A DNA stretch of 64,000 bases from Guillardia theta CCMP2712 (taxonomy: Eukaryota > Protista > Cryptophyta). The DNA is taken from positions 125,837 to 189,836 of the forward strand of contig NW_005434546.1 of the NCBI RefSeq assembly GCF_000315625.1, given 5' to 3'. The position numbers and the translations under genes are program-made. Every line of letters starts with the position of its first letter. Within the stretch, counting starts at the first letter, position 1. This document shows, in pieces, positions 3,521 to 31,902 of this stretch. Under the pieces are notes generated by a model. It had not been told where the DNA came from. It did no database searches and was given only the letters and a program-made list of their open reading frames with translations.

Positions 3521-4117
3521 TCCTCAACTGCCCCCCCACCCCTACCCCCATCTGCAAACTACCCCTGGATCCTCATGAATACCACCCTACCCCTTTTGTG
3601 AGATCACACAATCCTTCTTCTTGTAGAGTCTCTCAGAAACCCATCAAGTATGAATATCTTATAGTTTTGTCGCTATACTCAAAAGGGGTTCCCTTGACCT
3701 TGCTCTGCCTTTTGGGTGCACCACACGTACCCTGCTCTCTGTCAGCGTACCCCCACCCCTTCACCTTCCTCCATTGCTCCTTCCTCCTTCCTGTACAACC
3801 CCCGTCTCCTCACCTTTCCTGCCTCCCTCCTCTTCACTTCTGCTCTAGTAGCTTCTATAGTGCTCTTCATACCCCCTCCCCCAGGCCCTTCTATTACGCT
3901 CTTGAACCCCTCCTCTCCTCTTCCATCATCATCCTACAGTTCTCTTTACCTCCAATCTACTTGTCATCCTACCCTTGATCCTATACTATAGAGCTCTCAA
4001 CCTTTTATTCATTCTCTTCTCTTCATATCAGCCGTAAACCATCGCAGATTCTCTCTTCCATCAACCTTTTTCAGTTCATACAACGAGTGTCGCTTCATAC
4101 AACAGACATCAGCTGCC

Positions 4118-6269: not shown

Positions 6270-9200
6270 CTAGAAGATGTAGTCTGGGGTCACCGTCTTG
6301 TGCTCCCTCAGCATGTCAGGATGAAACTCCATCCTGGGAACCTTGACCTGCTGCCCGTCACCTCCTCGCCTCCCCCGACGCTCTTCCCTTCCCCCCCTCC
6401 GCTGCTCACCTCCACCAGGTCTGTCAGCTCAATATCCGAGTACTCTAGCCTCCTCTTGGTCGCCTTCGGCAGCACCTACCGCCTCCTCTCAGCAAACCAG
6501 CAGGACCCCAGCAGGACTGTACCACGAGCGAGATCTCAGAGCCCGGCTCTCCTCGTATCAGCTTCTCGCACATCCGCTCCGTCGTCACCTGCCGGCCGTT
6601 CAGTGACTCCCCGACATCTCCAGCTGACGCCCACCAGCTCCCCGTCTACAAAGCAGATAGTGTCCCCGGTCTCCACCTGCAGCGGCTCATCCTCGCAGCT
6701 GGAGCACAGCTGCTCACCTTCCCCCTGCACGGACTGTCGCCGGCGACTCTCGTGACGATGAGCTCTGCTCCCTGCCGCATCCACTCGATGCCGATCCCCT
6801 GGAAGAGCGTGAGGAGGAACGAAAGAGAGGGAGGGAGAGGGATGGCGAGGTAGAGGTAGAGGGAGGGGGAGAGGGAGAGGGAGAGAGAGGGAGAGGGGGA
6901 GAGGGAGAGGTAGAGGACGAGCAGAGATGGAGGAGAGACGGCAGTTAAAAGTGACAAGGTGAAAGAAGGAGAATGGAGCGATGATCGGTGAAGGGGACGA
7001 AAGAAGAGAAGGACGGGAGCTCACGGTTCCTCGGAGAGGATAATAAGGATACTTGGAGCGGAGGATCACATTCGCCTGCTCCCCGAAAAGTTTCTCCACG
7101 TCCCACCTGAGCAGGGGAGAGCGTTTGAGAGTGAGCTAGGAGGCAAGTGCGGTGCAGACAATCGTCTCCATACCCTTCTTTCCACATGCTCTCGATCAAT
7201 CCCTCGACTGACGGCAAGTCAGAGACAAACTTCACAGCTCGACCTCTCCAACGTTGCATGTGCCGGACCATAAAACGATCCTCCACGTGCTTCTTCTCTG
7301 CCCAGCAGCCGTCAGCTTCACACCCTCGGCCCTCGCTGGCTGCCTCCGACCTTCCAACCTGCCTATCACGCTCTCTGCATAGATCCTGCTCCCAAGGCTC
7401 ACTGAAGCGTTTCAACCTCCCCGTCAACTCACTTCTTTGGGACTTGTGGGAGTTGGTCGACGACTAGGTTTTCATAGTCGACGCCTGCAAGCTGAGAGCA
7501 AAAGGTCATTGAGGTGCCCAGGAAGTTCAACGGTTACGCTCAAGTTCTTGTTTTCTTTGAACCATTTGTACCACTGATGCATTGAAATTTGTCCTGCAGG
7601 GTCATGTAAGGATAGAGAAAGTTGACTGAGCTCACGGTCGAGGCGTTTGAGGTTCACCAGGAGTGAAAGTTTCATTTCCTCTGTGCTGCTTCCATTCCTC
7701 CCGCTCGCCGATGATGCCCGGACACTCGACCATGTTGTTCACGTCTCTTTCCACTTCTAGTCCGCAGCCAAACCAGTTGACCGGACAGTGAGCGAAAAGA
7801 TGCTGCAGGACTTTGGTTTGATCTGGCAGACGTTTCAACTTGATGATGGTGTAGAGGGCGAGCAAGAGGAGGCGATTAAGCTTGTCACGAGAGGAGCATG
7901 TCGAGAAAGCGATGGGGAAGGCAGTGATGAGAAGACAGGGAGGAAAATGTGAAGAAACAAGCGTGAACACGTGCGTCACCTTCAGACCCGATCGCATTCT
8001 CTGAGAAATATTTCTTCACATAAAACATCTTTGTCGCTTCCCTCAACTTGAAGCAACACACACCTCAAACGTGAGTTGTCAACGAAAAAGATTACGGCCA
8101 CTACCTGTTGAGCTTTCATGATGTCAGCAGATCTCACGAGACTGTCTTGCAGGGCAAGTCTGTGCGACTGGATTCCCTCTTGGATCTACACAGGTCTTTA
8201 GAACTGAGATTGCAAACATGGAATACCTCGAGAGCTTTGTAATGTTCTGTTTCATTGTTTCTCAACTTGCCCATGGCTTGAAGGATTTCAATCTGTTGCC
8301 ACAGCCTCGCTCATCAACCCTCCTCCTCCCTCTATCTCAAGACTCACCACACTCAGAGCCGTTCCATCCTCATGAATGACGGGGATGTTCAGATCGATAC
8401 CCACAGGTGTTTCTCGAGCGTGTAAATTCGATCCCTGCACCTCTTCCTCCCCGCCCCGCCATTGCTCATTCTCCTCCTCGTCCTCGCCGATCTTCTCTCT
8501 CCACTCCTGTCCTTTCCACAAGTTCTCTTCCTCCTCGTCTTCCATTCCTTCTTCCTTCCTGTCTTCAGCTCGAGACTGCAGCTCGGGTCCGCTCCTCTTC
8601 TCCTCAGCCACGATCAATTCCTTCATCTCCTCGTCCTCGTTCCCATTCTCCTCTGCCCCCCCTCGCACCCTCAGCCTCCCTGACACAAACGACAGGAGGA
8701 CGTCAGAGCAACTCCCTCCTCGCAGCTTCATTGCTGCTGCTCCGACAAGACCTGGATACCCTGAGCTTCTTCCCGCAGCAGGCAGTGTAAGTTACCTTCG
8801 TCCTCCAAGGCCTGTTCAAGGTCCTTGCAGCAACAATCAGCAGCAAGTCTCGACTGGGGTTGTAGTTACCTTTCTCTGCCCCATGTTGAGGGAGAATTTC
8901 TCCACCAGCTCTTCCTTCTCCATGGCTGCTAGCTGGGCAAGCGAAACCTGCCGAGTCAAGATGTCAAACCCAGTCATGATCTACCTATCCCCTCACGTTT
9001 GCTTCCAGCACGCGCTGCCCGACGTCATCGAGCAACTTGTGTTTGACAAGGAACGCCGACAAGTCCATCTCAACTTGCTTGACAGCCGCCGACTTCTTGG
9101 CAGATCTCCTGGCTGCCGCCCCCGGGGCAGCAGACACGCGGGTCGTCTTTGCCTTGCCAACTTTCGTGTTCTTATTCTTCTTGAGCTCCCACTCGAAGTT

Positions 9201-11716
9201 AAGCTCCTCCAGCAACAACTTCTTCTCTGCCGCTAGCAGCCCCTTCCTTATCTTACTCCTCTGCGTCATCACCCACGTCCCCAGGGGAGGGTTTTCCACG
9301 TGGCGTTTGGGCACGTTGGAGTGTCCGTGCTGCCTGTGGAAAGCCTGCAGCTCGAGGTAACGAGCCTCCCACTCCTTGTCCCTCTTTTGGGTTCGCTCGT
9401 CGACGCTCTCGTCGTCGTCGTCGTCAGGGAGGTTGTCAAACGATGAGAAGTCATCGCTGTGGGAGAGGAGGAGGCTCTCGTCTACCACCCCGTTCTCGAT
9501 CAGGACAGTCTGGTTGAACCTGGCAGACACCTCCTCCCTGATAAACCCCGACGGGGATTGCTTCTGCAGCTGCAGAAGCGCTTTGTCTCTTGCCTCCCAC
9601 CCGGCTCTCAGAACTTCACGGCTAGAGTTGTCAGCCGCGTCCTCGTTCAGCAGGAGCCCCTCCTCTCTTAGGATCTTCCTCCTCTCAAACATGCGCATGA
9701 ACTGGAGCTGGTAGGCGTTGTGGTACGAATTGTTCCTAGCCAGCTCGATCGACTCCATCATCATGTCGTCAAACGCCATGACGTGAAATCGTTTGAACTG
9801 CTTGAGCTCTCGGTTGATGTACCTTCGAGCAAGCGACCACAGCTCCAACGAATGATCGTTCGGCTTCGACTTGACAAACTTGCAGTAGTCAAAGAGCGTC
9901 AAGTTGGCTGCCCTGGCAGAGGCGTTGAGGTCTTCGATCCACAAGTGATCCCTCGAAGTATCACTATCACCTCCTGACTTGTCTGCGGTCGTCTTTCCCT
10001 TGTCCTTTGCCACCATTTTCTTCGCTTCCTTCTTTCCATCGGCCATCCTTGTACCATCTGGTCCTTCTCCCTCCTCCTCCGACCACTCTGAGAGCTCCTC
10101 ACTTTGTTGATCGCCCTTAAGCTCCCCAGCTCCTTCCGGCTCCTTCACGTCCGACTGCGTTCCCCACTGCCTCGCAAGATTCTCAAAATTTTCATCCTCG
10201 TTGCCAAGATCGAGGTTGAAACCATCTGCCAAGGACTTGGGAACCTGTTCCTGTTCGCTGCTCAAGGAGATTCACCGCGATTTTCACGGCGAGAACGCAC
10301 TTTACCTCTCGCGTTCCTCTCCCGCCTTTGCATTTTCAGAGGCAATGACGATGGTAGGCGGTTGCACCTGTAGTGAGCAGTCAGCGACATCCAACTTTCA
10401 ACTTCCGCATGTCCTTGCCTGATGGCTCGCTTCCATAAATAGCTGCGGAGAAAGTCAGAGATGAAAGATGGTATGATCCAAAATCACTACAACCACCATA
10501 GGAATTTAAAATCATCAAGCTTCTCATCAGAATCCTTCTTGCCATCATCATCGTCATCATCAAAGATATCACTATCGCCGCCCCCTCTCAAACTCAATAC
10601 TTCACAAAACAATACCTTCGATTGAAGTTCCAGCAGCCTTTGTTGCTCCTAAAAGGGCTTGTCAAAGGGAGGATGGCAATATGCATCAAGGAACAAACCG
10701 CCTCCTGCTGGAGTTTCTGCCTCATCTTTGCCTCTTGCTTCAATGCCCTGCAGGAACAGATTCATACTTTTCTTCTCGTCTTCATCGTTCTTCACCTAGC
10801 CTTCTCCGACTTGCTTTGCCTCACTTCCGAAAGCTTCCTCTTCTTCTCGGGATTCTCCACCTCCTCCTCACCGGCCTGACCGCTCTGGGCACTCGGCGCT
10901 TGTGCGGGGGCCGCAGCAGGAGCTGAGAACAGATCTGGTCGAGTACTTTTCATGTCTTCCAACCACTTGGCGTCGTCCATCAGAATGTCGTCAAGGTCCG
11001 AGCCTCCACGGAGGTTGTTGGGGTTCGAGTGTATCGAGAAGTAACTCTGGTTCCTCCGTAAGAGCCTGGAAGTCAGCGCATTCTTCAGCTGCGGAACCTC
11101 AGTCTCGAGGAACGATCTCTTTGCAAGCTCATGACTGAAGTCCCCTTCACTTTTCAGCGCGCTCTGGAGCTTCCTCCTTTGGAGACGTCGATCCAATGCA
11201 GCGACTTCACTCGGATCTGCCAACTTCTTCATCTCTTCCCACTCATCCGTTCCGTTGAGATGTTGGTAGGCTGTCATGAGGTCAATCCAGCCCTCGAACT
11301 TGTACCCCTTGCTCTCCGGGCAATCGAAATGATAGCCCTGGTGGAATGCGATCTGAAGGTCAAAATTTAGTATGTCGCCAGGTCGACCAGCAACGCACAA
11401 CCTCTCTCATCAGACGGCTGACATTGCTCGGTTTCGCAGTTCGCCCCATGATCTTGACCGCAGGCAACGAGTCGTCCTCCATCTGCTCACTGCCAGCGGC
11501 GGTTGTGTTCAACCTTCGGAAGAACTGCCCGTCACTTGCCACGAATATGCTGTCAGTAAGAGCTCCACAACCACCACGAACGCGCAACGTGGCATGCTGG
11601 AAGGGAACTGAAAGCTGTCGGGCGATGCTGCTGTCAGTTGTTTGCAGTTGGAGAACAGAGAAGAAAGAAATTTGAATGAATAGCTCCAGCCCTGGGGATT
11701 GCCTACCAACAACCAT
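6270..11716 (-). CDS. Large spliced multidomain protein: leader, unknown segments, helicase-associated (HA) domain, SAM domain and C-terminal PDZ-like domain, with (L/V)RGG linkers
   Basis: HA: WEARYLELQAFHRQHGHSNVPKRHVENPPLGTWVMTQRSKIRKGLLAAEKKLLLEELNFEW. SAM after splicing: LSAFLVKHKLLDDVGQRVLEANVSLAQLAAMEKEELVEKFSLNMGQRKDLEQAL. PDZ-like: GIGIEWMRQGAELIVTRVAGDSP...GDTICFVDG. A phase-1 intron joins the SAM exon in frame to ORF 8288-8731. Could instead be 2-3 genes. Confidence 0.6.
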
Positions 11717-16335: not shown

Positions 16336-18233
16336 CTATTTCCATATCTTTCCGAGCTCAGACTTCAAGGTAGCAGCAACCAGAATGCTCAAGAAAGTTG
16401 AAGGAACCAAGAAAAGTAGAGCCGGTTGTCCTGCTCCAGAGTTGAAAGCTTCGCATAAGAAACATCCCACGGAATATCTGGACAGGGATGATGATTAAAT
16501 TATGTAGCTAGAGACACCACACAACTCACCCCCCGAGAGATGCTTGAAGGTACCAGTTGCTCTTCTCTTGTACATCTACTTGTCCTGCAAATCATCCATA
16601 ATCTCATGATTCCTTGCACCCTTTATGGCGGTCTTACCCTCGCCCGGAGAAGTTGTTTCCGATTCCTTTGTTTTGTCCTTGTCAAATCTTGCTGCCCATC
16701 CGGTCAACATTGCCTGGAAGTATTGAGTGATGGAGAACAGAAATATTACATCTACCGGGAAGACAGCGTCTGCAAGTCCAAGTGCGTCCGTTGGCTTTCC
16801 ATCAATCACAACTTCAAGCAGCCCAGGCTGCCATGACGATCCCGAGAGCTTGGCTCTAGCTTATCAAAATGTCACTGTCAAGATTCAGTATGCAACAAAC
16901 CTTACCCACAGACTCCATTACAGAGGCTGCTGGTTCAGCAGCTGAAGCAGGAGGAACGAGGAAAGAAGATCCATAGACCCCGAAAAGGTCATACGCCACC
17001 TTCATTCCAGTCATGGGGTACAGAGATCGCGCGGACTAAGTGAAGGAACCAATCCTCCAAGAGCAGCGACAGTGACGGGAAGTGACGCGAGCTGAACTGA
17101 ACGCGCAGCCGTGATGGCAATACAGCTGTTGATGGCGTTTCTTTCAGCTGAAGTCAGTAACCGAGAGCTGATGCGTGCAGCAACACCTCATGGGCCAAGC
17201 GACACTGGAAGGTGCCAGGAATGCGAACAGGACCCCAGCAGTGCTCAAGAGGAGAGGGATCTGGTTCGATACACTAGTCTTTTGGCCATCCTCATTGTCT
17301 TTCGCCTGAACTCCCAGCCAGGACAGAAAGTTCCGTACCTCCACTTGAAAGAAAAGGGTGCAAACTGCAAAATTACCAGCTCCAGACTGCAAGTGAACTG
17401 TAAGAAACAACGCTGCACCAGGCAAGATGACAAACCAGCACAGGCAAAACATTCAGTGATCTTTTCAGGCTCTGTAACACCTCGCTAGAGAGGAGCGAAC
17501 TGCTCGTATCCATGTTGGATAATGTTGAACCAAACAAGAAGAAGGACGAAAACAAGGAGAAGGCTAGGAATGCAGGGAGAAAGAAGGCTATGCTGACACC
17601 ACTGACATTATCAAGCTTTGCATAAGCTTGTTTGGCCACCTGTGCCAGTTTTAGATGAGAATTGCATTCGATGATCACCTCTCCATCATTGAAGGTCTTG
17701 GAGATGTTTGCTGTTCCAACGGATTGCAAGATCTCATCGTTGAGTAACTTGAGTCTGCTGCCCAAAGATGATGGAAGATCAACTGATCGCAGAGCCGCAA
17801 GATCGACTATGCTAATGGCCATGCAGTAGAGATACACCCTCTTCAAAATCAGGAACAGGATGATGAGCGTTCTTCTTTCATCTTGTTCGGTTGCTGCTTG
17901 CGCCATTGTGATGAGGTAGGGAAACACGTTGGACAAGAGTGGGAGTACAACGAAGACGCTCGTGTACTTGCTCAGGAGATTGGGTTGCAACGATCTCGCT
18001 TCTGACTGCTGCTGCATGCGGACCCTGCTCGTCACGGATTTTGCGTGCTTGGAGAGGGAAGGTTGGTGTGATGGGGAGGAATGGAAAGAGGTGAGGAAGG
18101 GATGGTAGCAGAAAGCGGAAGGAGATGAGCGCGAAGGATAGCATTGAAGGGAAGATGTAGAAGGAGAAGAGAAGCAGCAGGGCGATGAGATGTGTCGCAT
18201 GGACGCATGGAAAGACGCGGCCAGTGCTAGCAT
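16336..18233 (-). CDS. Signal peptide peptidase-like (peptidase A22B) intramembrane aspartyl protease with probable bipartite plastid leader
   Basis: Spliced exons give VAYDLFGVYG (YD at 16988-16993), DALGLADAVFP (GxGD position) and GAGQPALLFLVP (PAL motif), ending SELGKIWK* (stop 16336-16338). Multiple TM segments; Ser-rich N-terminal extension. Confidence 0.8.
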
Positions 18234-18436
18234 ATTGGTTTATAAGGGGATTCGTCGGGCAAGAACTGAATTAGGTAATAGATATTTCAGCCCGCTGGGG
18301 CCCACGAGGCAGGCCTGATCCAAAATACGTTTCCGGGTTCAAAATTTTCAATATATTCAAAATTATACCCTTGATAATTTGAATATCAACTTTCAGAAAT
18401 TTCAATTTATTATCAATATTTGTTTTGCCGACAAAG

Positions 18437-21010
18437 ATGCAGGTGGATCATGATAATGCAGCTGAGAGACGCGATCAGGCAGCTGATCATTCTCAAGGTC
18501 CTATGAGTATGCAGGTTGAACCAGCCGCAGCCATTCAGATTCAAGCAAATGACTCTGAAGCACAAGGAGGGAGAAGGAATGCAAGGCGTTCAGATGCAGA
18601 GAGACGTCCACGACAGGATAGATCAGCAGAGAGCTTCAGTGACAATTCAAGAGCAATGTACGTTTCCAGCATGAGCGCTTTCATGCGATTCATCTATCAA
18701 CACAAACCCAACCTGCTCACTCCTGAGTTCAAGGCCATGATAGAAAGGCAACTGGAACCTGCCTCCGACGATTGCCCACCCTTGCCAACGAAGAAAGGAA
18801 CACGAGCTGCATTATTGGAGATCTGGTTAGAAAGCACAGGCAATTTTGTGATCACTGCATTGCTCATTAGAAGCTGACGAGAAGTCAATTTGGCAGGCAC
18901 TGCACCAAGGATTCATCCCATCAAGTTTGACGAATTCACGTCTGAGGACTTTTTGATGTGGATTAAGCACCTACAGGAGACAACAGAAAATGGACTTGCA
19001 TCGTATTCCAATCATCGTACCGCTCTGTCCTGCCTCTTCAAAGCTTTTGAACAACCAATTCCATCACAGATGAAGATCGACTTGCACGATTTCTTCAGCC
19101 GACTGAAGGAGATCTGCAATACCTCCAACGCAAGTGATGCACCCAAAACCATAGGAGGCAAAAAGCCAGTCAGCATGACGACTTACCGTCTCTTGGCTAG
19201 GAACATGCTGTTTTCTCAGAAAAGAATGTACGTCTTCGCAAGGACGTACATGATATTTTGTTGGAATCTAATGTGCAAGGCAGGAAGTGCTGAAAGCATT
19301 CAATTCGATCACATGTGCTGGGACGAAGATCATCTTCAAATCTTCTTTTCACATTCCAAAACGGGCCAGACAACTGGGGGCCGTCCAGGGGATCCCAGGA
19401 GGGTTTATGCCAACCCTACCTGCCCTGAGATCTGCCCCATCTTGGCATTGGGGATTTACTTGTTGTGCTACCTACCAGATAGAACAATCCTGTTTCCAGG
19501 TCGATCGCAGAGCAAACGATTCTTGCAAATCTTTTCAAAAATCTTGTCACCCCCGGAGGACCGGCAGAGGGCCCGGAGTATCGGCAATGTGGAAAATGAA
19601 GAGCCTGATGAGGATCGATTTCAGATGGCTGTTCGTGCTCACATGAAATCGTTGGGGCTGCGTGCCGAGGACTTTGGCAGCGCCTCGTTCTCCAAAGGAG
19701 CGGCGGAATACTGCAGCGTGGGAAGTACCCACGGCCCTCCCAGTGCGGCAGTGTCAGGGAGACAGTCAGATGGAGCGATGTTGAAAAGCAATTCTCGCTG
19801 TGAAGCTGCAGGTGATTGTTATGTGGGCAGGACGGTCTGTGGGTTGCCTATTCACCAAACTGAGTTCGCTATTCTCCCACCACATTTCACTCAGCGAGAT
19901 GAATTTCTCACGCAAATGATTGATTTGTGCTTTCCAACCTTACCAGCATCCATGAATCGCGTGGCGGAGTTTGTCTTGGCTTCAGTCCTGCATCATGTTG
20001 ATTTTCTCAAAGCGAATCTTGAACCACAGCATATTCTATGGCAATCTACCTTGTTTCGTGAACAAGAATGTCTTGTCGCATTGAAGTCCAAGGTTGTGTG
20101 CTGTATGCCCAAGGAAGCGAGAGGCAGAATGGAATCTACAGGAATCCCTCCTCATGTACAACAATACATACAGAGTGACGAGCTTTTGTCATCTCTTTCC
20201 AAGATACAGCAGGACATGGTTGAAATGAACCAATACATGAACAGATTTAGGCAACAGGTTCCCTCAGCAGTGCAAGGGGGCGAAGGAGCTACTACTGGAT
20301 TCAGGGTGACCGAGAGTGACAAGGAAAGCTTGAAAGAATGCCTACGGCAAACCTTGCGCGAGGTCATTCAGGAAGTACTGCTAGAGGAAACCGGCGGGCG
20401 CAGCAATCAAACTCCTTATCATCAACCCTCTCACCCACCGCGAGGCAGCCCTGCGTCAGGCGCCGGACTTGTGAGAAACGTGTCAAACATCACAGAAGAA
20501 CAGGCATCAAGATTGCAACACCAGAATGAGGCGGGGGCCGGGGCGGGTCCACAGCAAAGCGACATTATGCTGACCGAGGAGTTTGGAACCGCTATGGTGG
20601 TATGGAACATGTGGTTTTGTGGGAACGCGAGCAAACGGATCCCACCGCTCCGGCTTGTATCTGCGAGTTCGTTGAATGGCAAAAACAACAAAAAAAGATT
20701 CTCAGACATCAAATTCCTTGTTGAGAGCTTTGAAAAGCACGCGAGGGATGTGATCTCCCGTGATCAAACGGGGTCGCGTGAGCAGCGGATGCAGCAACTA
20801 CAGAGGCTGAAGACACTACCCGCAGGGCCAGCTCTACTGGAAGAATGTCAGGAAGTGTTCTTGAGATACGAAAGCTCGTTCTTCGCCTGGTTGAAGATAG
20901 ATGGGTCCATTCGCTCTCGACTGGGTGGCCAACAGCTAAGATGGACCACATTGGTGAAGAAGATCAGAGGGGTACTGACTGGTGAACGTGGACCAAACTC
21001 TGCTTCATGA
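18437..21010 (+). CDS. Crypton-type tyrosine-recombinase-derived protein with C-terminal GCR1_C-like domain; catalytic residues substituted (~838 aa, one 57-nt GC-AG intron 18840-18896)
   Basis: Crypton YR blocks: CWNLMCKAGS, HMCWDEDHLQIFFSHSKTGQ, RRVYANPTCPEICPILALGIY, LFPGRSQSKRF, EAAGDCYVGRTVCGLP, FAILPPHF. C-terminal VWNMWFCGNASKRIPPLRLV...KKRFSDIKFL. ORFs 18425-18877 and 18890-21010 share a frame and are bridged by an in-frame intron with a CTGAC branch site. Confidence 0.85.
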
Positions 21011-21436
21011 TCAACTTACATGAAAATCAACTTACATGACTCAAACTTCCGAAGTTCAACGTAACTTGATCTAGCTTTAAAGGTCAATGTAGATGAATAT
21101 CTAGAGCCAACAGTGACTGATCTGTGAGTAACTTGTTTGCAAATACATCTACTCCTCTCATTCGCCTCCACTACCAATACTCAGCGGCAGTTTGAGGTAC
21201 AGCAATCGGCAACATGAAGGTTGGTTCTCACTGTCTCAGTTCTCTTCTCGCCGTATGGCCTGTGCAACAGTGTCAGGGTCAAGCCTCCTCGAACTGATAT
21301 TTTCAGTCACTGAACTAACTTCCGAGGCTGGTGAGTAAAGAGACTGCAGTCGGAGCCGGCCAGGTTTAGTTCAGAGGCGTTTTAGCTAGTTTGCTGGCGA
21401 CCCTTGACCACAAAGTTAACGAATCTACAGCACACC

Positions 21437-23959
21437 ATGCTCAAGGCCAAGAAGCATACGATCGGTAGGAGGAGGAGGAGGAGGAGGAGGAGGAGGAGGA
21501 GGAGGAGGAGGAGGAGGAGGAGGAGGAGGAGGAGCAAATCATAGTGGAGGTGATCAAAAGAGGAAACGAGGGAGACTGGAGAGATGCAGTGGTGGAAAGA
21601 ACTATAAGATGTAAGGAAAGTGGACAGATAAAGGAGAGTGAGAGGATATGAGATACGTGAGGATGCAGAGAGAAGGAGAGAAGAAGGAAGACATGTAGAC
21701 ATTTAGCGAGGTGTGCTTTCATCGCTATCTGACAATCTCTGCAGCGGACTCTAATGTTGAGGATATCGGCAGCTCGATTGACAAGGCTCAACGCATGATG
21801 GTGAGCAAAGTGAGGAGGAGGCTTCAGGCGAGTGACGCTGGACTGTCAGGCTGCCAAGACGGAGAAGGAGTGGGAGAATGTGAGTGAGTCTTGTCTGCTA
21901 TCAGCTCATCCCCGTCTCCAGGCTGGCAGCAAACCTGGCCTTGAGATCTGGAGGGTCGAGAACAGGTGAAGGAGGAAGCAAGGGACATGAGGGAAGGAAG
22001 AGGGAGAGAGGGGGAGAGGGAGAGGGAGAAGATCTCAAAATAATGATGGAGGACGTGGACAGTCGAACAGAAAACGACAACCCTGACTTCGGAATCAAGA
22101 GAGTGCCTGCAGAAGATTACAGGTAGTTCGCTCCCATATCATTCTTTCCTGTCTCTCCTATGGGTCCGATCGATGAACTTTCTGTATGTGCATGTCTACA
22201 GTTTGCTGTTCTTGATTGTAGGACCTGATTGTTGCATGAGCTTTGCCTTTGTAGAGCTCTTCATGGTTGACTTCTACGTTACTCCTCCCTCCCTCCCTCC
22301 CTGTCCCTTCCCCTCCCTCCCTCCCTCCCTCCCTCCCTCCTTCTCCTTCGTTGTCTCACCCCAACTTCACCAGTCCTGCTTCTTCTCAATTCTTCTTCAT
22401 CATCATTCTCTTCCATCCCTCCCTTTCTCCGTCTAATTCTTCCCTTCCCTCTTCCTATCCTTTTCCCTTTCTCCCTTTCTCCCCAAAGACTTGGCTGTCG
22501 ATGACACGCTCCATGACATGTTGGGCACAGGAAGTTCTACAGAGGCGACTCATACATCTTGCTCTACACGTACACAGACTCCGAGAGTAATCAACTGTTC
22601 TGCTCTCCCTCCCTCCTCTCCCTCCTTTCTTGCTCTTCCACCTCGGTCCCCTTCCTCTTCCGCTCCCTCTTGCTGACTTCCTTCACATCCCTCCTGCTCC
22701 CCTAAATCCCTTCCTACCTACCTCGCTCCTCACGCGCTCTCAGCGGACTCTCTTCGCTGGAACGTGCACTATTGGATTGGATCGGAGAGCACGGCAGACG
22801 AGTACGGGGTCTGTTTCTCTCCTCCTCCTCTCCCCTTTCCTGACTGCAGGTCCAGGTAGCCGCGTACAAGACTGTCGAGCTAGACGACCTGCTGGGCGGA
22901 GCTCCAGTGCAGTATCGGGAGATGGAAGGCTACGAGTCTGATCTTTTCCTGTTAGACCTCTGTCCCTGCCTCTGCCTTGCCCCTCCTCCTCCTCTGCTCC
23001 TGCTCACCCTCCTACTACTCTAACTCCTCCTACTCCCCTCACTCCTTCACTTACTCCCCGTCCTGTCATCCCGCTTCTCTCTGCATCTCTTATCCTCTCT
23101 CTCCTCTTACCTTGGAGCAGGAGCTACTTTGGCTCCGGTGGTGTCTGCCCTGGTAGCATTCAGATCCTTGAGGGCGGGCATGCCAGCGGCTTTCGCAAGG
23201 TGGAGCAGCAGGAATTCAGCCCGCGGCTGTTCTGGGTGAGGAGGGAAGCTGGAGTCATGCTGTGCTCGGAGGTGGCGATGGGGCTGGACAGTTTAAACCG
23301 CGGGGACTGCTTCCTCCTCGACAGCGGGAGCAAGGTGTTCATCTACCGCGGCGACGAGTCGGATCCCTTTGAGAAGAACAAGGCGGCGACTGTAGCCAAG
23401 GAGATGGAGGGCGAGAGGAACGGGCGCTGCAAGTGTGTAGATGCGGAGGATGAGCCCGAGTTCTGGCAGATGCTGGGAGGTGAGATCGGCTGCTCAGTCA
23501 AGGGGCCCGTGGAGCACGCGAAGCGAGACACGGAGAGCTGCCGGGTGGTGGAGCTGTACAGCATGGAGGACGATTCACTAGAGTTCGTCAAGGTCGCTGA
23601 TGGCCTCCTCCGCCCAGATCAGCTCGCCGACGATGACGTCATGCTGGTAAACTGCGGAACTAAGATCTTCGTGTCCGTCGGCTCCGCAGCTCCGCAGCAG
23701 GAGAAGGCATGCTGCATGCTCAAAGCGCAGGCTTTCATCGCCAGCAAGGGGCTGCCTCCCTTCACCCCAATCATGCGCGTCCTCAAGGGACAAGATGTGC
23801 GCTGCAAGTACAACCCTCTTTCTGCTTGACCCTCATCCTCCTCATCCCTTCTTGCCCCTTTCTCCTTCCATTCTTTCTTCTTCCCCTCGCCAACAACCTT
23901 CTGCATCACCTTGACTCTGATCCAGGCAGTGGGACGCGTGCTTTGCCTCAGCAGCCTGA
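21437..23959 (+). CDS. Severin/gelsolin-family actin-severing protein (3 gelsolin domains)
   Basis: Exons read [122 protein letters not shown]. Confidence 0.9.
21467..21533. repeat. (GAG)n microsatellite in the first severin intron
   Basis: About 22 perfect GGA/GAG units. Confidence 0.9.
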
Positions 23960-30507: not shown

Positions 30508-31902
30508 CTACACCATCAGCTCAATGCTTGCACAGTGACCTGCCCCTTCGTTCACAAAGAGCGGATGATGCGTCCTTACGTCCGCCATACAATGCTTGAT
30601 CACACTCGCCAAGTGGGAAAGCCTGTCCTCTCCTACAGTGATTGATTTCCTCATGAATACGATAGACTCCCTGGCAATGGCTACTCTTTTTGCTGCTTTC
30701 TCAGGGTCGTGCTGCTGCATTGAGGGAGGGAGGAATCTGTTCTTGTACAAGTGGTAGGATTCGGGCGAAGCTGATTCAAAGACAATAGTATAGCCGGAGT
30801 GTATGCCAGCATGATTCCAGCTCTTTTCAAGGAAGCATTTCAAGTAAAGCATGCGTTTTTCTTGCTCTGGACCGCCGCGTCGCTCCACCTTGATGTAAAA
30901 GATCGACTGGGCGTTGAACGAGCACAAGATGGATGAGACCCACGCAACCAACAGCTCATACTCGCTCATCGAGTTGACGAGGTCGTGGCAGAAGAATCGA
31001 GACAGGATCTCAGTGTGGTGACAGCCGAACAGGTCCGACATCTCGTCTCCTATCCTCAATCTCTTGCAGTTCAAATTCGAGTCAAACTCGACTGACAACC
31101 ATCGTCCATGTCCCCATCGATCATTGCTTGCGATCGTATCAAAGCAGGCTATGTCCTCCTCATATGCCCCTGCATTAAACGTTTCTAACATCTTCGCTCG
31201 TTCGTTCTGCTGAAATCTGCTCACTCGGCCCAGTCCGCTCTGATGGGTCAAGAGAGCCTGATATGCTGGGTTTTGTATCGAGCTCTTGGTGAGACCCTCG
31301 CGTATCAGTTCAACTAGTTCATCCACTGCAACTTTGAGGTCGAGCGGAAGGAGCTTGAAAGCTCTGAAGAGCATTGAGACGTCAAAGCCCAGCTCCCACA
31401 GAGGGCGTACAAGGCTGATGTTCACACCGCTGAAAGCGCAGGTATCTTTCAATGCGCGCAGAGACGCTTCTTGGGCAAAAGCATCTGGGAAATAAGCTTC
31501 TCGTGCGTCGAAGATGCTGGTAGACAACGAGACATTGCACTCTGTCAGACATTTGTGGCTTGTTCCTGCCATGATGCACATCACACAAGGCCTTTCTTGG
31601 CTGCACTTCCGCTTCTTCAGCTTGCATTCTGCACAAGACTTGCGGGTGTATTTGGACCTCTTGTTTCGTGGACGATGATCGATATTGCTCTCAACTTCAT
31701 GAGCTTGTCGCACAGAATGAGAACCTTCTATTAGGTTGACAGCAAGGCTTTGCGCAGCATGGCGGTTGACGCTTGAAAGTTTCGCGGCCATCTGATCGCA
31801 CCACTCGTCGTAGTCTACACCAACAGGTTCAGGATGGCGTTCAACAGGCAGACGCACCCTCTTACCGTCAGCATGACGCTTTGCACCAACCGCAGCAGAC
31901 AT
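30508..31902 (-). CDS. Zn(II)2Cys6 binuclear-cluster transcription-factor-like protein, intronless
   Basis: RKSCAECKLKKRKCSQERPCVMCIMAGTSHKC = C-x2-C-x6-C-x5-C-x2-C-x8-C in a 464-aa open ORF. Confidence 0.8.
   Translation of the reverse strand: MSAAVGAKRHADGKRVRLPVERHPEPVGVDYDEWCDQMAAKLSSVNRHAAQSLAVNLIEGSHSVRQAHEVESNIDHRPRNKRSKYTRKSCAECKLKKRKCSQERPCVMCIMAGTSHKCLTECNVSLSTSIFDAREAYFPDAFAQEASLRALKDTCAFSGVNISLVRPLWELGFDVSMLFRAFKLLPLDLKVAVDELVELIREGLTKSSIQNPAYQALLTHQSGLGRVSRFQQNERAKMLETFNAGAYEEDIACFDTIASNDRWGHGRWLSVEFDSNLNCKRLRIGDEMSDLFGCHHTEILSRFFCHDLVNSMSEYELLVAWVSSILCSFNAQSIFYIKVERRGGPEQEKRMLYLKCFLEKSWNHAGIHSGYTIVFESASPESYHLYKNRFLPPSMQQHDPEKAAKRVAIARESIVFMRKSITVGEDRLSHLASVIKHCMADVRTHHPLFVNEGAGHCASIELMV

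What the first reader, a model, noticed from the sequence alone, without database searches (positions are those of the whole stretch)
18437..21010. Intact Crypton-derived gene with a substituted catalytic site: candidate domesticated Ndc10/Gcr1-like DNA-binding protein
Seen: a stop-free ~838-aa frame (one in-frame intron) with all structural blocks of a Crypton tyrosine recombinase. Compared with the recalled Crypton consensus, four of the five catalytic positions are changed. WNLMxR becomes WNLMCK. GTHSFRKG becomes GSASFSKG (H and R lost). RAGWSLG becomes RQSDGAM (W lost). DRYxRYEAAGD becomes NSRCEAAGD (nucleophile Tyr lost). Only the Lys in SKTGQ appears retained. A GCR1_C-like C-terminus is kept. 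The gene sits between ordinary host genes with no visible element ends. Established: catalytically dead Crypton derivatives became the yeast kinetochore protein Ndc10/Cbf2 and the Gcr1/Msn1/Hot1 factors in fungi, and the ZMYM/QRICH1/KIAA1958 proteins in animals. Inference: selective loss of catalysis with conserved scaffold points to an independent domestication in this algal lineage as a chromatin, centromere or transcription factor.
Basis: partly seen in the sequence, partly recalled or inferred. Interest (0 to 1): 0.9.

Follow-up and report, generated by a model that had tools for sequence, protein, structure and literature searches.

The report
Catalytically dead Crypton recombinase gene, Guillardia
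A single-copy gene in the alga Guillardia theta descends from a Crypton "jumping gene" recombinase that has lost its cutting residues and mobile ends but stayed otherwise intact, so the host has probably kept it as a DNA-binding protein while active relatives still sit in the same genome.

Summary
The window is Guillardia theta CCMP2712, scaffold JH993092.1. At 18437-21010 (+) there is an 838-codon reading frame. It has two exons and one 57-nt intron, at the same codon and phase as in three relatives, though here the donor is GC.

The protein belongs to a large CryptonS-like tyrosine recombinase family from oomycetes, diatoms and metagenomes. Its predicted fold matches Cre, Flp, Xer and Ndc10. 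Over 95% of 194 aligned relatives keep R-K-H-R-W-Y. This gene keeps only the Lys (K,K,A,S,deleted,N). It retains all 30 other columns that are at least 95% conserved.

In simulated neutral decay, losing 5 of 6 catalytic residues always brought at least 7 stop codons; the gene has none.

New here: G. theta also carries a multi-copy, 96-99% identical, catalytically intact Crypton family with defined ends. The window gene is 48% identical to it, is single-copy among annotated models, and lacks those ends. Hanusia phi expresses two further dead paralogues, inactivated independently.

The claimed GCR1_C C-terminus is not supported.

Verdict: a probable domesticated, non-catalytic DNA-binding derivative. 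Expression, splicing and orthologues remain unshown.

The parts
18437..18839 (+). Exon 1 (134 codons plus 1 base). It holds a basic GGRR..RR, NLS-like stretch and the first helix of the N-terminal core-binding-type domain.
   Evidence: First in-frame ATG after the upstream stop. Aligns to the family N-terminus. Colinear with exon 1 of L002, L004 and L006.
18840..18896 (+). 57-nt phase-1 intron with a GC donor (cag|GCAATT) and acceptor tttggcag|gc. It contains the in-frame TGA at 18875-77.
   Evidence: Same codon and phase as the GT-AG introns of L002 (873-926), L004 and L006. Splicing was not verified; the donor lacks +2 T and +5 G.
18897..21010 (+). Exon 2, ending in the TGA stop. At 706 aa it is part of the longest ORF in the 64-kb window.
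   Evidence: The AlphaFold2 model has pLDDT 84 and pTM 0.82.
19223..20150 (+). Tyrosine-recombinase catalytic-domain fold, approximate limits.
   Evidence: The top Foldseek hits are Tre/Cre, Ndc10, Flp, XerH and IntI, with probabilities of 0.9-1.0.
19277..19279 (+). Arg I position, now Lys (AAG).
   Evidence: R in 183 of 186 filled cells.
19358..19360 (+). Catalytic Lys, retained (AAA).
   Evidence: K in 189 of 192 filled cells.
19682..19693 (+). The HxxR box, now AxxS. His to Ala (GCC) and Arg II to Ser (TCC) each need at least 2 base changes from the relatives' codons.
19760..19792 (+). The segment RAGW..(9)..Y of relatives. Here the Trp is removed by a 2-codon in-frame deletion and the nucleophile Tyr is Asn (AAT, 19790-92).
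   Evidence: There is no W or Y anywhere between GSTH and EAAGD.
20495..20989 (+). Family-specific all-helical C-terminal domain with the motif W..W.CG......PPLR and a final QLxW.T.
   Evidence: Conserved in 53 relatives. Modelled at pLDDT 86. No Pfam match, including GCR1_C, and no PDB fold match.
18353..18386 (.). Imperfect palindrome ATATTCAAAATTAT-ACCCTTG-ATAATTTGAATAT (13/14-7-13) about 50 nt upstream of the ATG. Candidate relic binding site or promoter element.
   Evidence: These are the only two ATATTCAAA in 64 kb. Inverted repeats were found. The related motif occurs in the 5' regions of L006, L007 and L002 but not of L008 or L004.

Best explanation
This is an immobilised, single-copy descendant of a CryptonS-like tyrosine recombinase transposon in Guillardia theta. 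Its active site has been dismantled, while the two-domain DNA clamp and the family's C-terminal helical domain are preserved by purifying selection.

The most likely mode of action is as follows. The protein is imported into the nucleus via the basic motif in exon 1. It binds DNA as recombinases do, clasping inverted-repeat sites as dimers or tetramers, but it cannot cleave. It therefore acts as a sequence-specific DNA-binding factor. Candidate targets are the lox-like palindrome in front of its own gene and sites of the resident active Crypton family.

Shown: descent, fold, loss of catalytic residues, loss of element ends, intact ORF and non-neutral pattern of change.
Inferred: expression, splicing, DNA binding and targets.
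For: - Organism and locus: NCBI partial models XP_005822340 and XP_005822341 are 100% identical to parts of the ORF.
- Family: 2967 relatives at E<=1e-3. Named ones come from oomycetes and diatoms, and some are labelled integrase.
- Fold: the top PDB matches are Cre, Tre, Flp, Xer, IntI and Ndc10.
- Catalytic residues: R, K, H, R, W and Y are each kept in 183-189 of 194 relatives. The window has K, K, A, S, deletion and N.
- Selectivity: 5 of 6 catalytic columns are lost but 0 of 30 other columns conserved at >=95% (Fisher p=1.6e-5). At >=90% the only two extra losses sit next to the Lys and the Trp.
- Neutral-decay simulation: losing 5 of 6 catalytic residues needs a median of 0.6 substitutions per site and then gives a median of 29 stops and a minimum of 7. 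None of 1000 runs had zero stops. The gene has none outside the intron, and its one deletion is in frame.
- Catalytic codons carry multiple hits, which points to long relaxation there.
- Divergence: against its intact relative L002, dN is 0.45 while synonymous sites are saturated (pS 0.83).
- Immobility: both end motifs of the active family are absent. There is no second copy in the window. Both NCBI models are one-member 90% clusters on one contig.
- Parallel cases: two expressed, ORF-intact dead paralogues exist in Hanusia phi.
Against: - No transcript-derived protein of this gene is in the 15-billion-protein collection, whereas transcripts of the active family and of the Hanusia paralogues are.
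- The intron donor is GC and lacks +5 G, where relatives have GTTAGA or GTTAGG. Splicing is therefore doubtful, and without it translation stops at 18875.
- The branch is about twice as long as those of the intact relatives (0.61 vs 0.32 and 0.28; 43 vs 22 unique changes).
- Codon usage is closer to the transposon's than to neighbouring host ORFs.
- No orthologue is known. The Hanusia proteins fall outside the window-plus-active trio.
- dN/dS on the gene's own branch could not be measured.
- The Fisher test is partly post hoc, because the gene was picked for its catalytic losses.
Confidence: 0.6

Rival explanations
1. It is a dead transposon relic, that is, a pseudogene. In this view it is an old Crypton copy that lost its ends, its active site and, through the GT-to-GC donor change, its splicing. 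It makes no functional product, and its open frame reflects chance or only recent release from constraint.
For: - No transcript is on record.
- The GC donor is weak.
- The branch is twice as long as those of the intact relatives.
- Codon usage resembles the transposon's.
- The NCBI pipeline produced only two partial models.
- No orthologue is known.
Against: - Neutral loss of 5 of 6 catalytic residues never left the frame open in 1000 simulations.
- 0 of 30 other ultra-conserved positions changed.
- The only indel in the catalytic segment is in frame.
- Exon 1 is also open and conserved.
Confidence: 0.28
2. It is still a working recombinase or transposase that uses shifted or unconventional catalytic residues.
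For: The fold, the Lys and the conserved Arg of the RAGW motif are kept, and Arg I is replaced by Lys, which is also basic.
Against: - There is no Tyr or Trp anywhere in the segment that carries them in relatives.
- The only nearby Tyr, in GDCY, is Phe in intact relatives.
- His and Arg II are replaced by Ala and Ser.
- The locus has no element ends and no further copies.
Confidence: 0.02
3. It is a protein-interaction scaffold rather than a DNA binder, as proposed for some DUF3504 domains in ZMYM proteins. In this view the recombinase fold is kept for partner binding.
For: Kojima and Jurka (PMC3212892) suggest protein-protein roles for DUF3504. The conserved C-terminal domain has no recognisable DNA-binding fold.
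Against: Both lobes of the DNA clamp and every non-catalytic ultra-conserved residue of a DNA-acting enzyme family are retained. No test here separates the two roles.
Confidence: 0.1

Closest known systems
CryptonS transposons of oomycetes and a diatom (Kojima and Jurka 2011, PMC3212892)
   Same: - A gene encoding only a tyrosine recombinase, with no GCR1_C but its own conserved C-terminal region.
- Named relatives come from Phytophthora, Aphanomyces, Thraustotheca and Nitzschia.
- The active G. theta copies have 5-bp terminal direct repeats.
   Different: - The window gene has no ends, is single-copy and is catalytically dead.
- The host is a cryptophyte rather than a stramenopile.
- The terminal repeat of the G. 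theta family is ACTTA-like rather than TATGG.
- No Repbase sequence was available for a direct comparison.
Ndc10/Cbf2 and Gcr1/Msn1/Hot1 of budding yeasts (CryptonF-derived)
   Same: - A Crypton recombinase fold kept without a catalytic site and used by the host to bind DNA.
- Ndc10 (4aco, 6gyp) is among the top structural matches.
   Different: - They derive from CryptonF and carry GCR1_C, which is absent here.
- There is no sequence-level similarity to Ndc10 chains.
- This would be an independent event in an unrelated lineage.
DUF3504 genes of animals (ZMYM2-4, QRICH1, KIAA1958, KCTD1), CryptonA-derived
   Same: A domesticated Crypton recombinase domain that lacks most of the catalytic tetrad.
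   Different: - No Pfam DUF3504 hit.
- A different Crypton group.
- The animal genes are fused to zinc fingers and other domains, whereas this one keeps the stand-alone transposon architecture.
Cre, Flp and Xer tyrosine recombinases
   Same: - A two-lobed fold.
- In relatives, the R..K..HxxR..W..(9)..Y pattern with Cre-like spacing. The Cre residue numbers are from general knowledge.
   Different: - 12-14% sequence identity.
- 5 of the 6 catalytic residues are missing here.
- An extra long coiled region and a C-terminal domain.
Truncated or inactive transposase derivatives that repress their own family (P-element KP repressor type)
   Same: An inactive relative coexists with an intact multi-copy family in one genome.
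   Different: No functional evidence. The copy is anciently diverged (48% identity), not a recent deletion derivative.

Membership tests
Tyrosine recombinase superfamily (Cre/Int/Flp) | Two-domain fold: a helical core-binding domain plus a catalytic domain | tested here: met
   AlphaFold2 gave pLDDT 84. The top 45 Foldseek PDB hits are tyrosine recombinases or the recombinase-derived Ndc10 (probability up to 1.00, TM to target about 0.48, E 7e-3 and above).
Tyrosine recombinase superfamily (Cre/Int/Flp) | Catalytic R-K-H-R-H/W-Y set | tested here: not met
   The window has K, K, A, S, deleted and N. Relatives keep each residue in 183-189 of 194.
Tyrosine recombinase superfamily (Cre/Int/Flp) | Sequence-profile match to Pfam Phage_integrase or to solved recombinases | tested here: not met
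   No Pfam hit. Only 2 of 18 relatives gave a weak Phage_int_SAM_4 match. The PDB profile searches found nothing.
Crypton transposable element (as a mobile unit) | Element ends with short terminal direct repeats, shared between copies | tested here: not met
   The active G. theta copies share ends (ACTTATAGTACTTTGGGAGGA... and ...GATCCCATAGCTCTAC) plus ACTTA repeats. Neither end motif occurs in the window at <=3 mismatches, and the flanks show no similarity.
Crypton transposable element (as a mobile unit) | More than one copy | tested here: not met
   There is no second copy in the window. Each NCBI model is a one-member cluster on one contig. The whole genome could not be searched at DNA level.
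CryptonS group | No GCR1_C; a group-specific conserved C-terminal region | tested here: met
   compared with the description in PMC3212892.
CryptonS group | Clusters with Repbase CryptonS recombinases | not testable with these tools
   No Repbase sequences are held. The only indirect support is the host range of named relatives, which are oomycetes and diatoms.
CryptonF-derived genes (Ndc10/Gcr1 type) | GCR1_C domain | tested here: not met
   No PF12550 hit at E<=1 in the protein, in 18 relatives or in 53 C-terminal domains. The C-terminal model has no PDB match.
DUF3504 (CryptonA-derived genes) | Pfam DUF3504 match | tested here: not met
Domesticated transposase gene | Open frame kept by selection after loss of mobility | tested here: met
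   The tests were indirect: the selective pattern of loss, the neutral simulation and dN far below the saturated dS against L002. Branch-specific dN/dS was not obtainable.
Domesticated transposase gene | Syntenic orthologues in related species | not testable with these tools
   No other cryptophyte genome is searchable. The Hanusia transcripts are paralogues.
Domesticated transposase gene | Expression | tested here: inconclusive
   No transcript-derived protein is on record. That collection is not an expression assay.

The most novel reading that the evidence does not exclude
The dead recombinase is a host-retained, trans-dominant inhibitor of the intact Crypton family that still lives in the G. 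theta genome. It would bind the same inverted-repeat sites, or co-assemble with active subunits into synapses that cannot cleave. Cryptophytes would have evolved such poisoned subunits repeatedly: once in Guillardia and at least once in Hanusia.
Probability: 0.15. Interest if true: 0.75.

Novelty: new member of a known kind. Interest (0 to 1): 0.58.

Why it matters
Crypton recombinases are known to have been turned into host proteins in yeasts (Ndc10, Gcr1) and in animals (ZMYM, QRICH1). In those cases the parent transposons have long since gone from the genomes concerned.

Here a candidate domestication sits in a different eukaryotic supergroup and derives from a different Crypton group. The same genome still holds an intact, multi-copy relative whose ends are defined. 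Parent and derivative can therefore be compared directly in one culturable, sequenced alga.

The questions that become testable are which DNA each protein binds, whether the dead one interferes with the live one, and what the family-specific C-terminal domain does. The work also gives a corrected gene model for two fragmentary G. theta annotations.

Tried and rejected
- Pfam on the protein, on 18 relatives and on 53 C-terminal domains gave no informative family.
- phmmer and profile searches against PDB sequences found nothing.
- A profile search with the three dead proteins brought no new members and missed one of its own seeds, because the word index limits it.
- NG86 dN/dS against L002 could not be computed because synonymous sites are saturated (pS 0.83).
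- TATGG terminal repeats occur at chance frequency and are uninformative.
- blastn of the flanks against L002, L004 and the active copies showed no similarity outside coding sequence.
- Scans of viral contigs and metagenome contigs found no viral relative and only one distant metagenome locus.
- Codon usage and GC3 as a sign of long residence were inconclusive.
- An exact look-up of the 684-aa ATG-started product found nothing on record.
- Rfam on the window found nothing.
- I first thought that loss of Trp and Tyr was ancestral to a dead cryptophyte clade. That was rejected once the intact relatives L002 and the G. theta family were found inside the clade.
- The alternative in-frame GT-AG intron 18826-18909 was rejected because it is not at the homologous position and its acceptor is poor.
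- No contig was taken to be human.

Full report
**What is there**

ORFs 18425-18877 (150 aa) and 18890-21010 (706 aa) lie in the same frame and are separated by one TGA at 18875-77. The 706-aa ORF is the longest in the whole 64-kb window.

Removing 18840-18896 (57 nt) joins ATG 18437 to the stop at 21010, giving 838 codons. This intron is not guesswork. In three relatives with DNA in hand, a 49-54-nt GT-AG intron interrupts the same Gly codon in the same phase (ACA G|GT.. ..CAG|G). These are metagenome contigs L002 and L004 and the G. theta copy L006. The upstream ORF also aligns to the family N-terminus (hhalign 89.5%, E 2e-6).

The window's donor is different, however: cag|GCAATT where the relatives have GTTAGA, GTTAGG or GTTGGA. 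It lacks +2 T and +5 G, so splicing remains to be shown.

**Organism and setting**

Two partial NCBI models of Guillardia theta CCMP2712 are 100% identical to pieces of the ORF. They are GUITHDRAFT_46905 (XP_005822340, 115 aa) and GUITHDRAFT_52330 (XP_005822341, 173 aa). The scaffold is JH993092.1. Both models splice out conserved coding sequence and are evidently wrong.

The neighbouring genes are a Peptidase_A22B gene (window about 16336-18017, minus strand) and a gelsolin gene (about 21437-23829, plus strand). Further out lie SAC3/CSN8 and an HA-domain gene. The intergenic gaps are about 420 and 430 bp. There is no second copy and no flanking repeat in the window.

**Family**

The word-indexed search found 70 relatives of 388-1235 aa. 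Named ones come from Nitzschia, Phytophthora, Thraustotheca and Aphanomyces, some are labelled integrase, and the best hit was a Hanusia phi transcript at 36%. The exhaustive search found 2967 relatives at E<=1e-3.

Neither Pfam nor PDB sequence searches recognise the family. The AlphaFold2 model is confident (pLDDT 84, pTM 0.82). Its top PDB matches are Tre/Cre, Flp, XerH, IntI and Ndc10, with probabilities up to 1.00.

The host range, the absence of GCR1_C and a conserved C-terminal region of its own match the description of CryptonS by Kojima and Jurka (PMC3212892). A direct comparison with Repbase was not possible.

**Active site**

In an alignment of 194 family members the six positions are kept as follows:

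| Position | Kept in |
|---|---|
| R | 183 |
| K | 189 |
| H | 183 |
| R | 188 |
| W | 186 |
| Y | 187 |

The spacing is Cre-like (HxxR; W then 9 residues then Y). The Cre numbering is from general knowledge.

The window protein has Lys, Lys, Ala, Ser, a 2-codon in-frame deletion that removes the Trp, and Asn. The second Tyr of DxYxRY is Cys. The Ala, Ser and Lys codons each differ by two or more bases from the codons of the intact relative L002. No Tyr or Trp lies anywhere in the segment, so a shifted nucleophile is not available.

**Is the loss selective?**

Among columns conserved at >=95% in catalytically intact members, the window has lost 5 of 6 catalytic columns but 0 of 30 others (Fisher p=1.6e-5). 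At >=90% the only two extra losses sit next to the Lys and the Trp. The catalytic half of this test is post hoc, because the gene was chosen for those losses. The 0 of 30 is not.

I also simulated neutral substitution on the intact relative's coding sequence until 5 of 6 catalytic residues were lost. This needed a median of 0.6 substitutions per site and left a median of 29 stop codons, with a minimum of 7. None of 1000 runs kept the frame open. The gene has no stop outside the intron, and its single indel in the catalytic segment is in frame.

Neutral decay is therefore rejected. The frame was held open while the active site was free to change, or was pushed to change.

**Relatives that changed the picture**

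A search with a 251-aa piece found P0210, which is 57% identical and lies on contig L002 (3818 bp), and P0216, which is 71% identical and lies on L004. L002 encodes a colinear 820-aa protein with three exons. It shares the clade-specific insertion and has all six catalytic residues. It is 49% identical overall to the window protein.

The 90% cluster of P0216 contains several partial G. theta models (GUITHDRAFT_73546, _63220, _82147, _67699, _45494), an MMETSP transcript and a 592-aa ENA protein with an intact site. The fetched loci show copies on JH993014.1 (one full and one truncated), JH993466.1 and JH992966.1.

The copies are 95.9-99.4% identical over about 3.5 kb. They share a left end (ACTTATAGTACTTTGGGAGGA...), a right end (...GATCCCATAGCTCTAC) and ACTTA-like 5-bp terminal direct repeats. 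Contig L002 shows the same end motifs. One copy has a frameshift in exon 1 but an intact 706-aa exon 2.

So G. theta carries a young, probably active Crypton family. The window gene is 48% identical to it and has neither end motif at <=3 mismatches.

**Phylogeny and rates**

In IQ-TREE (PMSF, careful search) the window gene, the G. theta active family and L002 form a near-trichotomy inside a clade supported at 100/100. That clade also holds two Hanusia phi transcript proteins, P0001 and P0101.

The Hanusia proteins are also dead, with R,R,H,R,M,E and R,K,D,Q,-,Q at the six positions. Intact members lie between them and the window gene, so the inactivations in Guillardia and Hanusia are independent events.

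The window branch is about twice as long as those of the intact relatives: 0.61 against 0.32 and 0.28, and 43 against 22 unique changes at 282 consensus columns (p=0.0125). Against L002, dN is 0.45 while synonymous sites are saturated. This fits relaxed or altered constraint, not absence of constraint.

**C-terminus**

The conserved C-terminal domain (W..W.CG......PPLR ... QLxW.T) models confidently as a helical bundle. It matches no Pfam family, including GCR1_C, in any of 53 members, and no solved fold.

**Weak points**

- No transcript-derived protein of this gene is in the collection, although transcripts of the active family and of the Hanusia paralogues are.
- The GC donor is weak.
- Codon usage correlates better with the transposon (r 0.59) than with nearby host ORFs (r 0.38).
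- No orthologue is known.

These keep the relic explanation alive at roughly one in four.

**Mechanism proposed**

The protein is a non-cleaving recombinase-fold DNA clamp. A candidate site lies just upstream of the gene: an imperfect 13/14-7-13 palindrome at 18353-18386, laid out like lox or FRT. It contains the only two ATATTCAAA in the window. The motif recurs in the 5' regions of L006, L007 and L002 but not of L008 or L004.

Whether the protein regulates host genes or interferes with the resident Cryptons cannot be decided here.

**Literature**

No paper in the held library reports Cryptons or Crypton-derived genes in cryptophytes. Repbase could not be checked.

Noticed in passing
L006 5055-8596 (JH993014.1), L007, L008, L010: G. 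theta carries a multi-copy, catalytically intact Crypton family. The copies are 96-99% identical over about 3.5 kb and have shared ends and ACTTA-like terminal direct repeats. It is annotated only as scattered partial hypothetical proteins. One copy has an exon-1 frameshift and one is 5'-truncated.
   Followed up: yes
P0001 and P0101 (Hanusia phi transcriptome, EukProt EP00960): Two divergent (29% identical) full-length transcripts of the same clade, both lacking the Trp and the Tyr. P0101 has also replaced the N-terminal domain with an acidic low-complexity stretch. They were inactivated independently of the Guillardia gene.
   Followed up: partly
P0004 and P0241 (Nitzschia inconspicua, two chromosomes) and P0044 (Thraustotheca clavata): Other family members show selective active-site loss: RKDRWH in Nitzschia and RNNRYN in Thraustotheca, with 0-1 of 30 other ultra-conserved columns lost. 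They may be further domestications.
   Followed up: no
window 18333-18420: An AT-rich block of TTCAAAAT/TTCAAT repeats that includes a 13/14-7-13 imperfect palindrome at 18353-18386. Exact TTCAAAATT and ATATTCAAA occur nowhere else in the 64 kb.
   Followed up: partly
window 21010-21071: Directly after the stop codon there is a perfect 14-nt direct repeat, ATCAACTTACATGA, twice at 16-nt spacing, and an 11-nt inverted partner at 21061-21071. Both repeat copies contain ACTTA, the terminal repeat of the active family. This may be chance.
   Followed up: partly
window 19313-20749 (NCBI models GUITHDRAFT_46905 and GUITHDRAFT_52330): The public annotation splits this gene into two partial models whose predicted introns remove conserved coding sequence. 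The models need correction to one 838-aa, two-exon gene.
   Followed up: yes
L002 1-150 and about 3690-3760: The metagenome contig starts with a 64-bp segment repeated at 1-64 and 87-150. It carries a right-end-like motif next to a left-end-like motif, as if it had been assembled across a tandem or circular junction of the element.
   Followed up: no
L002 1866-1918 versus window 19827/19828: L002 has a second 53-nt intron inside GDCFVG|RTV. That intron is absent from the window gene and from the G. theta active family.
   Followed up: partly
window 21467-21534: A perfect (AGG)x22.7 microsatellite in the gap before the gelsolin gene. CT-rich low-complexity tracts lie at 22284-22340.
   Followed up: no
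window 30508-31902 (-) and 8985-10265 (-): A 464-aa ORF with a borderline fungal-type Zn(2)Cys(6) cluster match (20.4 bits against a cut-off of 21), and an exon of a 1238-aa gene with a helicase-associated (HA) domain.
   Followed up: no
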